64,000 bases of DNA from Adineta vaga. Lineage: Eukaryota > Animalia > Rotifera. Under the pieces are notes generated by a model. It was not told the DNA's origin and did not search any database. It saw only the letters and a list, made by a program, of their open reading frames with translations. Of the stretch, positions 38,328-43,416 are shown in pieces. Every line of letters starts with the position of its first letter. Positions within the stretch are counted from its first letter, which is position 1. The translations under genes were made by a program, and so were the position numbers. Where the stretch lies: the NCBI GenBank assembly GCA_021613535.1, contig CP075495.1:12710001-12774000 (forward strand). Reading direction: 5' to 3'.

Positions 38328-39798
38328 ATGTCTCAAACAACGACTGACGCAGCAGCTGCAGAAATAACAGCAAAAAATGTGAATCCAATCAAGGATTTCA
38401 TTGCCGGTGGTGTTGGTGGTGCTTGTCTTGTTATTACAGGTCATCCGTTAGACACGATTAAAGTAAGTGTAGAGAAAGTATTTTTTCGTCGATATGATTT
38501 AGTAATAAAACATAATAAATAGATCGAGTGGATCAAAATCTGACTGTCCACTTTTGAATATGAAAGATTTCATTGTAATATTAAGGTTCGATTACAAACA
38601 CAAGCAAAACCTCAACCTGGTCAAATGGCATTTTACACAGGAACTTTCGATTGTGCAAAAAAGATTGTCGCAAAAGAAGTATAGATGATTGTGAAGAAAG
38701 TACCAAAAACGAAACATTTCTCTCGTTTTAATAGGGTTTCACTGGTTTATATAAAGGCATGAGTGCACCGCTTATCGGTATGTTGATTATTGAACTATTT
38801 AAATGTTCTAAAAATTAAGATTTTCTTTTCAAATCAAAAGGTGTTACACCAATGTTTGCTGTCTGTTTTTTTGGATTTGGTATTGGAAAGAAATTACAAA
38901 CACCAGCAGGTAAACATGGTGAATATACGTATGTACTAATTATTTTCAAATGATATGACATATAGAAATGTATTCACTTTTAGTTTATCACAACTGTTTG
39001 CTGCTGGTATGTTATCTGGTGTTTTTACAACTGTGATAATGGCACCTGGTGAACGAATCAAATGTTTATTACAGGTAGGAATATAAGTTTGTTGCAATTT
39101 GCAACGAAGTTTTTATTTTAAAACATCGACATAGATTCAAGATGCAGGCCACGAGAAGAAATATAAGGGCCCGATGGATTGTGCCAAACAATTATATAAA
39201 GAAGGTGGTATTCGCAGTATTTATCGAGGAACAGCTTTAACCTTAATGAGAGGTACAGTTGATGTTATGAACAGTATAATTAGGATTTAGAATAATAATC
39301 TCTCTACACATAGATGTACCTGCATCTGGTGTTTACTTTGCTTCATATGAATATTTGAAGAATGCATTAAGATCTGAAGGACAATCGTATGTAGAAATAA
39401 CATTCATGGATACATATCAATACCTTTATTTTTTTTAATAATATTAGTGAATTAGGTGCATTGAAGACATTATTTGCCGGTGGTATGGCTGGTGTTTGTA
39501 ATTGGATTGTTGCTATTCCACCTGATGTACTTAAATCAAGATTTCAAACAGGTTTGTTTTGATGATTGAACGTGTCTAAATCAATGATTATGTCTAATGT
39601 ATATATTTAATAGCGCCTGCTGGCAAATATTCTGGTGTTGGCGATGTTTTACGTGAGTTAATACGTACAGAAGGAATTCGATCACTTTACAAAGGTATTG
39701 TACCTGTGATGTTACGAGCATTTCCAGCCAATGCTGCATGCTTTCTCGGTTATGAAGTGACAATAAGATTTCTCAATACTCTATGGCCAAATTGGTGA
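38328..39798 (+). CDS. SLC25A20: mitochondrial carnitine/acylcarnitine carrier
   Basis: [93 protein letters not shown]. Confidence 0.95.
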
Positions 39799-40099
39799 AA
39801 ATAAGCAATTTTTTGATTTTCGTTTATTTTTATATCGCTAACAATTGGTTAAGATGAGTTGGTCTTTTTTTTTTAATGTACTAACTTTTTGTAGAATCAT
39901 TTTCATATTCTTCCAACCGATACTATAGATAAATCCGATATCGATTAATTAGCCTAATCTATTTCAAATAAAATTTCTTTTTTGAAGAAAGAAAGAACGG
40001 CAATAAACAATGTTTCTTTATTTCATTCTCATTATTATTAACAAAAAAACGTTTATCAAAAAAAAAAGAGACATTCATATATTGTTTTTTTTCATTCTT

Positions 40100-41714
40100 T
40101 TACAATTGATTATAAGATTTAATAACTTGTTCAATTTGTACAAAACCATTCAGAAATGCTTGCTCATCAATATCATATTTCATATAATGATGTAGATAAG
40201 CTTTTTGACCAAATAATTGCCAAGATTTATTTACTATTCTGTCAAGTGATGAGACAGGTGTTTGACAATTACTTATAAATGAAAGATATTTTTCATAATT
40301 CAGATAAGATTTATCACGATAACTCAATGACGTATAGTAATTTGCTGAAGAAAGAAAAGATGAATAGAAATTTGAATGATTAAAATATTGATTTAAATCA
40401 TTGCCAATATCTTCTTTATCATAGGAACGAGATAAAAAGAGATTTGCTAAAGATTTTGTTCGTGTTTGAAATGGTTTCAATGACCAATTTAATCCTTCAT
40501 CTAAATAAGAATTATTTATATACATTTGTGATAACGTTTTTACTAATGATGACCATTTATATGTACTAAAATCCATTGCTTGGTCACTTAATTGTGGAAC
40601 ACAACGAAGTGTTAATAATTTATAAAATGAATGTGGTAACAATTGTTCTAATAGATAATTAATTTCACAAATGGATTGATTTTTCTTTGCAATAGGTTGA
40701 AGAAAACTACATAAATGTCGAGTTAATATATTATTCATATCATGAATAGTTGTTGGACGATCAACACCTGAACATGAAACAAGTTTTTTTGCATATTGTT
40801 GAAGAATATCATTCTCAAAAACTAATAATGCATCAGTCGAATGATAAAGATGTGATAATGTTAATAAAGAATTGTAATTTTGTACTACAACTTCACCACT
40901 CGTGTACGGAACAACAATTGTTGTTAGAAGAAATGAACGTGGTAATTCATCACGAACACATTCAACGATATATGCACCGAGACCAGAACCTAAAGAGAAG
41001 ATTTTCTTCTTATAAAATTCGAAAATCATTTGTATTACCTGTTCCACCAGCAAGAGATAGAATTGGTAGAATAGTATCAACTCGATCAGCATGTTCCAGT
41101 TGCCATCGAAGTTTATTCAAGATACTTTCTTCTGCCAAGGAACCATTTCGATAACCACATGCCCAATTATTACCAGATCCGAGACGACCTTTTTCAAATT
41201 ATCGATAAACTATAAGAGTAGCATGAAAATTGAGACGATAGATAATTTAATGCATGCTTTCCTACGAAAAGTTGTTTTATAGATATTCAAACTCAATAAC
41301 TTTATTGAATCTCATGAAAACAAAATCTGACATTCAAGTGTATCAATAAACTAAAGATTACTTCTCCTATCTATGGGCAGGATTTTCTAGTTATTATCCA
41401 ATGCTAATAGTACCTTCAAAAACACATTTCTTTTCATACTGCCAATGTCGTTTTGCTTGAGCTTTTTCATCCATTAACTGTTCAATAACTTTAAGTTCCG
41501 TGTCGATAGCAAGTGCTCGTGCAATAAGTTTATTATCATATTGAATAAAAAATCGATCCAATGAATGACGAATATAATCATCAATAGAAGAACGATTATT
41601 AATTGTTAATTTTGTTGCATTGGAATGTGTCAGATTATCTTCAATTAATGTATCAAAAACACGTTGACCAACTTGATTTCCACATTGACCTAATTGTAAA
41701 ACAATACATGACAT
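40100..41714 (-). CDS. TUBD1: delta-tubulin, 3 exons
   Basis: MSCIVLQLGQCGNQVG, ARALAIDTELKVI, GSGNNWACGY, SLAGGTGSGLG, PYTSGEVVVQNYNSLLTLSHL, KAYLHHY...YNQL*. Confidence 0.93.
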
Positions 41715-41795
41715 CTAGAATGAACAATAACAATAAACAAAATTATTGTTTTCATCTTGTTTTATTTATTTATTTATTTCTTCTTCTTCCTCTTC

Positions 41796-42486
41796 TCAAT
41801 TATCCATCTGAAAATTTGCTAAAAAATCTTTTCCGGCAGCTTTTTCAGCTAGATAACGTTCATAAACTTTAGGAATATTTTGGAATTTTTCGATTTTTCT
41901 TTCCAATTGTCGAGCTGTTAATTGATAATCATTATGATGATCACGTGCCATGGCTTCATAGTTTGTTCCATGTTTTTCAATCATATAGATACAAAACCTA
42001 GATTTATATAAAACATAAATTTTCAGTCGATTCTCTTCGAAATAAAACATACAATCGATCTGGATCGGATATTCTCAATGATTTCACACGTTCTGTATTG
42101 GCATCTTTTTCAAGTTCATCTCGAATATGAACTTTAGTTGGTCGACGTCTTTTCGTTGTTTTCGTTGGTTCTACCGTAGGTAATATTGGTTGATTATCGT
42201 CGTCATCATCCGAATATGCTTCTTTTCGTTTATTATGTTTTTTGAGAATCTCCGGATTAATTAGATCTTTCGCATTTGGTATTGGAAATGCTTTTTTGAT
42301 ATCATGAGCAAGTGCAAATTCATGATAATTTGTTGGTACCGATAATTTTGTTTCCCAATTGGAACGTATCAATGGACAATGACGTACACGTACCTCACGT
42401 TTACGTTTTTCTTTTACCCATAATCTTTTTCGATTAATGTCATGTAGATAAACTTTACCACGTTTTCGGCGACGAGTTTGAACCAT
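41796..42486 (-). CDS. NOP16: nucleolar protein 16, 2 exons
   Basis: Basic N-terminus, CPLIRSNWETKLSVPTNYHEF, FCIYMIEKHGTNYEAMARDHHNDYQLTARQLERKI. Confidence 0.9.
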
Positions 42487-43416
42487 TTTTACTGATCTAT
42501 AATAGTAGAAAAAAAATTAGTCATAGGACAGATTCGATAACATTCACTCGAATTCGCGTGAACGTGAATGATCGTTTTATTCGGATCTGTTCTGTACCAT
42601 TATTTATATGTATGTATGTCTGTCTGTCCGTTTAGTTCTTTTCTGATTCGTTCGCATACGTATTAACAAAGTCAGTAGATGGCTCTGGCCAACGATAGAT
42701 AAGTTTGTTCACCTTCTGAAGAATGATTTCTACACAATTGGTGAATTATTTTTGTTTTTCTCAGAGTAATTGGTTCAATATAATGGAAAACAAAGGGAAT
42801 AATAGTATCCATTAAAGAATAAAGACAAACATACATCATTATATATATGTGATGCTATGCCTATAATTCGAGTTCGAATATACGAGTGATGATTTTGAAG
42901 TAGCTAACGATGTAATATTTGTAACCCATAGATATACTCGATGTTTAGCGTACAACAACTGTCTCCTTGAATCTATTTTCGCTATTATAGAATTAATATA
43001 TAAATTGACTGACTTATCGGCATTATCGTTTTTTTTGTATAGATAATGCAAAGTGAAACAAATCTATTCCTAAACAACAGCATACTTATTGATTATACGC
43101 AATGCACTAAAACGCAATTTTCCGAGAAAATAATAGATTGAAATTACTTGATAATTTCTATGATTTTTAAAATTGTACATTATACTTTTCTTTCCGTTGC
43201 AATACATCATATATTTAATTGTTGCATACATCATTGTCTACACTTTTATCAGCTGTACTATGTTATTTACGTCTTTGTGCATCGATTAAGCAGAACCGAA
43301 TTGGTTGTCGCCCATACAGTCCGATAGACATCAAAAGAAGAAAAAGATATATAAGAAAGTTGTTTTTCAGTATATGAATCTTATCATAAAATACAGAAAA
43401 ACAATCTAACTATCAC

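What the first reader, a model, noticed from the sequence alone, without database searches (positions are those of the whole stretch)
41700..41800. NOP16>TUBD1: 81-nt gap built like a trans-spliced operon junction
Seen: on the minus strand the NOP16 stop (41796) is followed by four overlapping AATAAA (41761-41778), then a GU/U-rich tract ttttgtttattgttattgttc, then attctag|ATG of delta-tubulin (41714). There is almost no room for a promoter and no GT donor far enough upstream within the gap to pair with this acceptor. Known: SL trans-splicing occurs in bdelloid rotifers, and nematode operons use the order poly(A) signal, U-rich element, trans-splice acceptor. Inference: a dicistronic pre-mRNA resolved by 3' cleavage plus SL addition. 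I am not aware of a detailed description of rotifer operons.
Basis: partly seen in the sequence, partly recalled or inferred. Interest (0 to 1): 0.8.

Follow-up and report, generated by a model that had tools for sequence, protein, structure and literature searches.

The report
Conserved NOP16–delta-tubulin operon-like junction, rotifer
In the bdelloid rotifer Adineta vaga the delta-tubulin gene starts 81 bases after the NOP16 gene, directly behind a splice acceptor that twelve bdelloid lineages keep. This makes it a good but not yet RNA-proven case of a spliced-leader operon, a layout that the papers I could search do not report for rotifers.

Summary
The genome is Adineta vaga.

For an operon:
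- It holds 59 spliced-leader (SL) RNA gene copies.
- Twelve bdelloid lineages (Adineta, Rotaria, unnamed) keep the layout: a 45-94 nt gap with AATAAA, a pyrimidine tract, and YAG touching the ATG.
- Against a close relative, the 36 nt before the ATG are 94% identical, like exons. The A-rich half is 78% and introns are 64-78%.
- In a related bdelloid, two RNA contigs have every intron removed yet run unbroken from NOP16 across the gap into TUBD1.
- Those contigs begin with the last letters of the SL on NOP16.
- A conserved two-part promoter-like element lies before NOP16 and nothing similar lies before TUBD1.

Not shown:
- No read joins the SL to TUBD1.
- No A. vaga RNA contig covers 41708-41883.
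- NOP16 contig depth is about 30 times that of TUBD1.

My reading, at about 0.6: a two-gene SL-resolved operon, compact and AAUAAA-bearing. Earlier notes of this scan report at least eight similar candidates elsewhere in this genome, so this is one more instance of a recurring feature.

The parts
42643..42685 (-). Candidate promoter module of the unit. GAGCCATCT lies at 42685-42677 and CGAATCAG at 42650-42643, 35 nt apart and 164-199 nt before the NOP16 ATG.
   Evidence: The two motifs are exact or one mismatch off, with 34-39 nt spacing, in A. vaga, A. ricciae, Rotaria sp. Silwood1 and Silwood2 and metagenome lineages. GAGCCATCT is also present in A. steineri. The promoter role is inferred.
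42497..42517 (-). Pyrimidine tract and acceptor (ttttttttctactattatAG) before the NOP16 5' UTR. This is the probable SL acceptor of the first gene.
   Evidence: YAG|ATC is kept in all genomic orthologs. The A. vaga RNA contig reaches 42498 plus one unmatched letter. In a relative, the RNA contig carries CAAGAG, the SL 3' end, at this spot, where genomes have ttttcag.
41796..42496 (-). NOP16 gene. Exon 1 is 42496-42053 (ATG at 42486), the intron is 42052-41998 (55 nt), and exon 2 is 41997-41796 (stop 41798-41796). The product is 211 aa.
   Evidence: Pfam Nop16. The intron is skipped in four RNA runs. The product is 100% identical over exon 1 to a 211-aa A. vaga protein.
41761..41778 (-). Four overlapping AATAAA, the poly(A) signal of NOP16.
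   Evidence: Read directly. One to four AATAAA are present in all 12 tight-junction lineages, 29-58 nt before the AG. The cleavage site was not observed.
41717..41750 (-). A branch-point-like CAATAAT followed by a T/GT-rich tract. I propose it serves as both the poly(A) downstream element and the polypyrimidine tract.
   Evidence: The gap's T-rich half (41750-41715) is 94% identical to the close relative L013, against 78% for the A-rich half and 64-78% for introns. The last 20 nt are at least 70% pyrimidine in all lineages. The double role is inferred.
41715..41716 (-). AG of the unpaired 3' splice site, directly touching the TUBD1 ATG. This is the proposed SL acceptor.
   Evidence: AG|ATG is invariant in 12 lineages. 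The only two changes against L013 (tctag to ttcag) keep YAG. No SL junction read was obtained.
40100..41714 (-). Delta-tubulin (TUBD1) gene. Exon 1 is 41714-41414, intron 1 is 41413-41189 (225 nt), exon 2 is 41188-41039, intron 2 is 41038-40990 (49 nt), and exon 3 is 40989-40100. The product is 446 aa.
   Evidence: Pfam Tubulin. Both introns are skipped in RNA contigs. Orthologs of 446 aa are named 'Tubulin delta chain'.

Best explanation
NOP16 and TUBD1 form a two-gene transcription unit.

1. RNA polymerase II starts about 100-200 nt before NOP16, near the conserved GAGCCATCT/CGAATCAG module. This step is inferred.
2. The NOP16 5' end is made by adding the SL at tattatag|ATC. This is shown in a relative and is consistent with the A. 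vaga data.
3. Transcription continues through the 81-nt gap into TUBD1. RNA continuity is shown in a relative.
4. The AAUAAA cluster and the U/GU-rich tract direct cleavage and polyadenylation of NOP16. This step is inferred.
5. The same U-rich tract, with a branch-like CAAUAAU and the AG at 41716-41715, accepts the 23-nt SL. The TUBD1 mRNA then starts SL|AUG with no 5' UTR of its own. This step is inferred from conservation.

Most transcripts probably end at the NOP16 poly(A) site. That would explain why TUBD1 is much rarer than NOP16.
For: - The anatomy is exact.
- SL RNA genes are present: 59 copies, none in the reversed control, each with a GTAAAT donor and a conserved 3' part.
- NOP16 lies directly upstream of TUBD1 in every bdelloid locus fetched: A. 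ricciae, A. steineri, Rotaria sp. Silwood1 and Silwood2, and seven unnamed lineages. The genes on either side differ between lineages.
- All 12 tight junctions share a 45-94 nt gap, 1-4 AATAAA, at least 70% pyrimidine in the last 20 nt, YAG touching the ATG, and no usable GT donor.
- The acceptor half of the gap is conserved like an exon: 94%, against 64-78% for introns.
- RNA contigs L025 and L026, from two runs of a related bdelloid, lack the NOP16 and TUBD1 introns yet keep the 57-nt gap.
- Those contigs stop at SL fragments (CAAGAG, CCAAGAG) next to adapters at the gene 5' ends. They do not run on into upstream DNA, which argues against genomic DNA as the bridge.
- A conserved promoter-like module lies before NOP16, and nothing similar lies before TUBD1.
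- In A. vaga no RNA contig lies on 42534-43268, so NOP16 is the first gene of the unit.
Against: - No read or contig joins the SL to TUBD1 in any species.
- In A. vaga, no RNA contig covers 41708-41883, so neither a precursor nor the NOP16 poly(A) site was seen.
- Contig depth is about 300 for NOP16 against about 10 for TUBD1. This fits separate regulation as well as attenuation, and contig depth is a poor measure in any case.
- A contig across two genes does not prove a single molecule.
- Didymodactylos carnosus keeps the gene order but has a 492-nt spacer with room for a promoter.
- A transcription start inside NOP16 cannot be excluded with these tools.
Confidence: 0.6

Rival explanations
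1. TUBD1 is SL trans-spliced but has its own promoter inside the NOP16 gene body (exon 2 or the intron). The RNA that crosses the gap is then the TUBD1 outron, overlapping the NOP16 3' UTR. The tight linkage would reflect genome compaction, not co-transcription.
For: Contig depth differs about 30-fold between the two genes. D. carnosus has a 492-nt spacer with an acceptor 17 nt before the ATG, so an independent promoter may be the older state. Contigs cannot tell an outron from a dicistronic precursor.
Against: No conserved non-coding element lies before TUBD1, while a clear one lies before NOP16. Such a promoter would have to sit in coding sequence in 12 lineages. The pair is never broken although both flanks change.
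Confidence: 0.22
2. No trans-splicing takes place at 41715. The T-rich tract is only the downstream element of the NOP16 poly(A) site. TUBD1 would be translated from read-through dicistronic RNA, or from a transcript that starts in the gap. The AG before the ATG would be kept for another reason, such as start-codon context.
For: The assembled RNA contigs of the relative show the unprocessed junction, not an SL junction. No SL-TUBD1 sequence was found anywhere.
Against: A YAG behind a pyrimidine tract and touching the ATG occurs at 5 of 2960 ATGs in the window, yet all 12 lineages keep it. The two changes against L013 preserve YAG. The NOP16 ATG context is not conserved in the same loci. A 23-nt SL branch would be trimmed by the assembler whenever the read-through path exists (my inference), and the metagenome collection holds no SL-bearing transcripts. 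The blanks therefore carry little weight.
Confidence: 0.1
3. The acceptor is used in cis. A 5' UTR exon further upstream, in or before NOP16, would be spliced to 41715.
For: Nothing beyond the existence of the acceptor. Coverage at the site in A. vaga is nil, so the absence of a joint is weak evidence.
Against: No joint ends at 41715 in four RNA runs. The relative's RNA contigs are colinear through the gap. No GT lies more than 40 nt before the AG within any gap. Splicing from the NOP16 exon 1 donor would break the reading frame, as the sequence shows.
Confidence: 0.05

Closest known systems
C. elegans SL1-type operons, a minor class with little or no intercistronic DNA (as described in PMC1488885)
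   Same: The genes lie head to tail. A canonical AAUAAA belongs to the upstream gene. The acceptor is so close that the poly(A) and trans-splice signals share sequence. The general SL would be used.
   Different: This is a different phylum with an unrelated 23-nt SL. Whether the poly(A) site touches the acceptor is unknown here. The junction is conserved across bdelloid families.
Ciona intestinalis operons (PMC1488885)
   Same: One SL serves both single genes and operons. The spacing is very tight. The genes in the unit are functionally unrelated. Expression of the two cistrons may be mutually exclusive per transcript.
   Different: Most Ciona operons (16 of 18) lack AATAAA within 40 nt of the upstream poly(A) site and have no intercistronic DNA. 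Here every lineage has AATAAA 29-58 nt before the AG.
Oikopleura dioica operons (23-30 nt intercistronic regions, cited in PMC1488885)
   Same: Short spacers of a few tens of nucleotides and a single SL.
   Different: Oikopleura upstream cistrons lack AATAAA. Its operons are often long, whereas this unit has two genes.
C. elegans SL2-type operons
   Different: The typical nematode intercistronic region is about 100 nt and uses a dedicated SL2. Here the whole stop-to-ATG gap is 45-94 nt. No dedicated leader is known, although SL sequence variants exist in the genome.
Chaetognath operons (Paraspadella gotoi, PMC12460157)
   Same: Chaetognaths belong to Gnathifera together with rotifers. Their operons are resolved by trans-splicing, have no operon-specific leader, and were defined by gaps under 250 bp.
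   Different: Those operons were documented genome-wide with RNA data. For rotifers that paper only names the phylum among trans-splicing lineages.

Membership tests
SL-resolved eukaryotic operon | Neighbouring genes on the same strand, separated by a very short spacer | tested here: met
   The gap is 81 nt in A. vaga and 45-94 nt in 12 lineages.
SL-resolved eukaryotic operon | The organism has SL RNA genes and uses SL trans-splicing | tested here: met
   59 SL copies with a GTAAAT donor. SL 3'-end letters sit on the NOP16 and carrier-gene 5' ends in a relative's RNA contigs. [quoted passage not shown]
SL-resolved eukaryotic operon | The downstream cistron's mRNA carries the SL at an acceptor in the spacer | tested here: inconclusive
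   The acceptor is invariant and under constraint, but no SL-TUBD1 junction was seen. A. vaga contigs stop at 41707. Assembled contigs would lose a short SL branch (my inference). The metagenome scan had no power.
SL-resolved eukaryotic operon | RNA that spans both cistrons (polycistronic precursor) | tested here: inconclusive
   Met in a related bdelloid: L025 and L026 are spliced in both genes and continuous across the gap, in two runs. Not seen in A. vaga, where 41708-41883 is uncovered. A contig is not a single molecule.
SL-resolved eukaryotic operon | No independent promoter for the downstream gene | not testable with these tools
   The only evidence is indirect: a conserved module before NOP16 and none before TUBD1. 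CAGE, PRO-cap or a deletion is needed.
C. elegans SL2-type operon | A dedicated SL2-like leader, and an intercistronic region of about 100 nt with a U-rich element after the poly(A) site | tested here: not met
   The spacer criterion fails: the whole gap is 45-94 nt and AATAAA lies 29-58 nt before the AG. Whether a dedicated leader exists could not be tested. SL variants exist in the genome, but their use is unknown.
Ciona/Oikopleura-type operon | The upstream cistron lacks AAUAAA (PMC1488885) | tested here: not met
   AATAAA is present in all 12 tight junctions.
Ciona/C. elegans SL1-type operon | The upstream poly(A) site directly touches the downstream acceptor | not testable with these tools
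   No 3'-end reads of NOP16 were obtained, and the tool masked 41753-41798 as a repeat.
Delta-tubulin (TUBD1) | Tubulin GTPase domain and orthology to named delta chains | tested here: met
   Pfam PF00091. The last exon is 85-91% identical to bdelloid proteins named 'Tubulin delta chain' and 36-38% identical to bird TUBD1.
Nop16 | Pfam PF09420 covering both ends of the profile | tested here: met
   Exon 1 matches profile positions 9-83 and exon 2 matches 170-209. The A. ricciae ortholog is named 'Nucleolar protein 16'.

The most novel reading that the evidence does not exclude
Bdelloid rotifers have true, evolutionarily conserved SL-resolved operons of a compact type of their own:
- An AAUAAA-bearing junction of 45-94 nt.
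- One U-rich tract that serves as both the poly(A) downstream element of the upstream gene and the polypyrimidine tract of the SL acceptor.
- A downstream mRNA whose whole 5' UTR is the SL.
- A junction that also works as an attenuator, setting a low fixed share of TUBD1 relative to NOP16.

The D. carnosus spacer of 492 nt would show that the tight form evolved from a looser linked pair.
Probability: 0.45. Interest if true: 0.65.

Novelty: new member of a known kind. Interest (0 to 1): 0.55.

Why it matters
SL-resolved operons are documented in nematodes, tunicates, flatworms, chaetognaths and some protists. For rotifers a 2021 methods paper states that none had been reported (PMC7986045), and I found no later description.

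A junction kept across Adineta and Rotaria would be a clean test case. Only two genes are involved, the acceptor touches the start codon, and an outgroup has a loose spacer. It would allow three questions to be asked:
- How do operons arise after trans-splicing exists?
- How do one poly(A) site and one acceptor share 40 nt?
- Can such junctions set expression ratios?

It also bears on annotation, because TUBD1 has no promoter region or 5' UTR of its own to look for. The value of this single locus is limited, since this scan has already flagged at least eight similar candidates in the same genome.

Tried and rejected
- **Reads on the window.** The one read-laying run used four RNA runs from four studies. 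It confirmed all introns but left 41708-41883 empty, so it gave no SL, no poly(A) site and no precursor in A. vaga.
- **SL-encoded N-terminal extensions.** I looked for them (the in-frame reading would be ...YQEMSC) among 160 fetched proteins and cluster members, and found none.
- **P0151 / L033.** It looked like a spliced RNA contig but is genomic DNA with short in-frame introns.
- **Metagenome scan for the SL 3' end joined to the TUBD1 start.** No hits. The control scan for SL|ATG gave one chance hit inside a bacterial-type gene, so that collection holds no SL-bearing transcripts and the blank means nothing.
- **A second copy in the genome.** Both genes are single-copy in the 6-contig assembly.
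- **Genomic DNA as the bridge in L025 and L026.** Rejected as the main source, because the contigs end at SL and adapter instead of running into upstream DNA.
- **Exon handling.** Spliced gene models were searched exon by exon, by reference.

Full report
**Observation.** On the minus strand, NOP16 ends ATG GAT AAT TGA, with the stop at 41798-41796. Four overlapping AATAAA lie at 41778-41761. They are followed by acaagatgaaaacaataattttgtttattgttattgttcattctag, and the next base, 41714, is the A of the delta-tubulin ATG. The gap is 81 nt. Every GT in it lies within about 22 nt of the AG, so no intron can be drawn inside the gap. In the 64-kb window, 5 of 2960 ATGs follow YAG plus a tract of at least 75% pyrimidine. 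Only this one also has AATAAA upstream.

**Genes and organism.** Pfam gives Nop16 for both NOP16 exons and Tubulin for two TUBD1 exons. RNA contigs of four public runs skip introns at 42052-41998, 41413-41189 and 41038-40990. This fixes gene models of 211 aa (NOP16) and 446 aa (TUBD1). The NOP16 exon 1 product is 100% identical to a 211-aa protein of Adineta vaga on a 16.27-Mb contig. The genome has 100.8 Mb in 6 contigs. The TUBD1 last exon is 85-91% identical to 'Tubulin delta chain' of A. ricciae, A. steineri, Rotaria species and Philodina roseola, and 36-38% identical to bird TUBD1. Both genes are single-copy in this assembly. All protein searches were made exon by exon, by reference.

[quoted passage not shown] Its last 22 nt occur 59 times in this genome at up to two mismatches, and never in the reversed control. 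Each copy I inspected is followed by a GTAAAT donor and about 75 nt of conserved sequence, and has a conserved upstream box. Many copies are head-to-head pairs 154 bp apart.

**Comparative evidence.**
- A search with TUBD1 exon 1 found 34 bdelloid proteins. Twelve look-ups of their contigs followed.
- NOP16 lies directly upstream on the same strand in every case: A. ricciae, A. steineri, Rotaria sp. Silwood1 and Silwood2, a close Adineta relative (L013), and six unnamed lineages from metagenomes or sequencing runs.
- The outer neighbours change. Upstream there is a kinase, an ML-domain gene or others. Downstream there is a convergent mitochondrial-carrier gene in most lineages and a Rieske gene in Rotaria sp. 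Silwood1.
- All twelve tight junctions share one plan: a 45-94 nt gap, an A-rich first part with 1-4 AATAAA, the last AATAAA 29-58 nt before the AG, at least 70% pyrimidine in the last 20 nt, YAG touching the ATG, and no GT more than 40 nt before the AG.
- Between A. vaga and L013, introns are 64-78% identical, exons are 92-97%, the A-rich half of the gap is 78% and the 36 nt before the ATG are 94%. The only two changes there turn tctag into ttcag, which keeps YAG.
- A TRAT-like motif (CAATAAT, CTAAT, CTGAT, ATGAT) sits 22-32 nt before the AG, where a branch point would be. This comes from reading the sequences and is an inference.
- Didymodactylos carnosus keeps the gene order but has a 492-nt spacer, with tttcag 17 nt before the ATG.

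**RNA evidence.**
- In A. vaga the contigs are uninformative at the junction. NOP16 contigs of three studies end at 41884 and the TUBD1 contig ends at 41707. Nothing lies on 41708-41883, and the tool masks 41753-41798 as a repeat.
- At the NOP16 5' end, the best contig reaches 42498, the AG of the acceptor or of the SL, plus one letter that does not match the genome.
- Nothing lies on 42534-43268 either, so no expressed gene lies just upstream of NOP16.
- Contig depth is about 300 (NOP16) against about 10 (TUBD1) in X1, 406 against 10-25 in X5, and 12 against 2-3 in X7. This is a poor measure of expression.
- In a related bdelloid, about 88-91% identical to locus L020, two Logan contigs from two runs (L025 of 3238 nt and L026 of 2110 nt) carry a continuous NOP16 frame and a continuous 445-aa TUBD1 frame. 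All introns are therefore removed, yet the 57-nt gap is kept.
- L026 starts with adapter sequence, then CAAGAG, then the NOP16 5' UTR. The genomic relatives have ttttcag or ttttag at that place.
- The far end of L025 is the reverse complement of CCAAGAG plus adapter, at the 5' end of the convergent carrier gene. Both strings are the 3' end of the SL.
- The contigs stop at these processed 5' ends and do not run into upstream DNA. Genomic DNA is therefore an unlikely source of the bridge across the gap. The gap is present in RNA at a higher level than the NOP16 outron.
- This shows RNA crossing AG|ATG unspliced. It does not show one molecule carrying both genes, and it does not show the SL on TUBD1. 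A 23-nt SL branch would be trimmed by the assembler whenever the read-through path exists. That last point is my inference.

**Promoter side.** Upstream of NOP16, GAGCCATCT (42685-42677) and CGAATCAG (42650-42643) recur at 34-39 nt spacing, 110-200 nt before the ATG. They are exact or one mismatch off in Adineta, Rotaria and metagenome lineages, within DNA that is otherwise unalignable. Nothing comparable precedes TUBD1.

**Mechanism proposed.**
1. Transcription starts after the conserved module (inferred).
2. The SL is added to NOP16 at 42497|42496 (shown in a relative).
3. Transcription reads through the gap (shown as RNA continuity in a relative).
4. Some transcripts are cleaved and polyadenylated under the AAUAAA cluster and the U/GU tract, giving NOP16 mRNA (inferred).
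5. Others receive the SL at 41715|41714, giving an mRNA that begins SL|AUG (inferred from conservation).

The depth ratio suggests that the poly(A) outcome dominates.

**Rivals.**
- An internal TUBD1 promoter inside NOP16, with trans-splicing of its own outron (0.22).
- No trans-splicing, with translation from read-through RNA (0.10).
- A cis-spliced upstream 5' exon (0.05).

**Comparison with known systems.**
- The order of elements is that of nematode operons, but the gap is shorter than the usual C. elegans intercistronic region of about 100 nt, and no dedicated SL2 is known here.
- Ciona operons lack intercistronic DNA and mostly lack AATAAA. Oikopleura has 23-30 nt spacers, also without AATAAA. 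The rare C. elegans SL1-type operons keep AAUAAA with no spacer (all from PMC1488885).
- The rotifer junction is nearest to the SL1 type, or to an Oikopleura-like spacer that carries AAUAAA. Which of the two depends on the unmeasured poly(A) site.
- Chaetognaths, also gnathiferans, have RNA-documented operons (PMC12460157).

[quoted passage not shown] Five full-text searches found no paper describing them. PMC12460157 only lists rotifers among lineages with trans-splicing and operonic transcription.

**Earlier notes of this scan.** They list at least eight other candidate SL operons in this same genome. Some are said to have SL junctions, and poly(A) tails that begin at the next acceptor. These are unchecked AI notes. 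In the stretch I fetched around one of them (s1-489515), I checked only that a junction with the same sequence plan exists, with AATAAA 24 nt before a ttttag acceptor. The present locus is therefore one more instance of a recurring feature, not a first sighting.

**Verdict.** This is a well-conserved, probable two-gene SL operon that lacks the decisive junction read.

Noticed in passing
window 42643-42685 (minus strand): GAGCCATCT and CGAATCAG lie 35 nt apart, 164-199 nt before the NOP16 ATG. They are kept with the same spacing in Adineta, Rotaria and metagenome bdelloids, in DNA that is otherwise unalignable. This is a candidate promoter module.
   Followed up: partly
window 41708-41883: No RNA contig from four runs lies here. 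NOP16 contigs of three studies all stop at 41884, 88 nt before the stop codon. Heterozygous repeats that break the assembly graph are my guess. It remains unexplained.
   Followed up: partly
G000 C5:9.88-9.93 Mb and 10.91-10.93 Mb, C2:8.68-8.69 Mb; loci L001-L012: There are 59 SL RNA gene copies, many as head-to-head pairs 154 bp apart in clusters. A recurrent variant leader (TTATTAAAACTT in place of TTATTACAACTT) is often the partner in a pair. Whether the variant has a separate use is unknown.
   Followed up: partly
window 42252 and 42271: All four RNA runs read T where the assembly has C on the + strand, inside NOP16 exon 1. This could be the other haplotype, a strain difference or an assembly error.
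   Followed up: no
L027 1620-2115 and L028 (Didymodactylos carnosus): The gene order NOP16 then TUBD1 is the same, but the spacer is 492 nt with no canonical AATAAA. An acceptor-like tttcag sits 17 nt before the ATG. This looks like a looser form of the linkage.
   Followed up: partly
window 39300-40100 and L025 2230-3237: A convergent mitochondrial-carrier gene ends close to the TUBD1 3' end. RNA contigs chain the two genes through overlapping 3' ends. In the relative, the carrier's 5' end carries CCAAGAG, the SL 3' end.
   Followed up: partly
L035, exon start at 1355 (+) (G000 C2, about 13.79 Mb): Another junction with AATAAA 24 nt before a ttttag acceptor and an ATG 12 nt after it. It lies in the stretch fetched around an earlier scan note on a three-gene operon.
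   Followed up: partly
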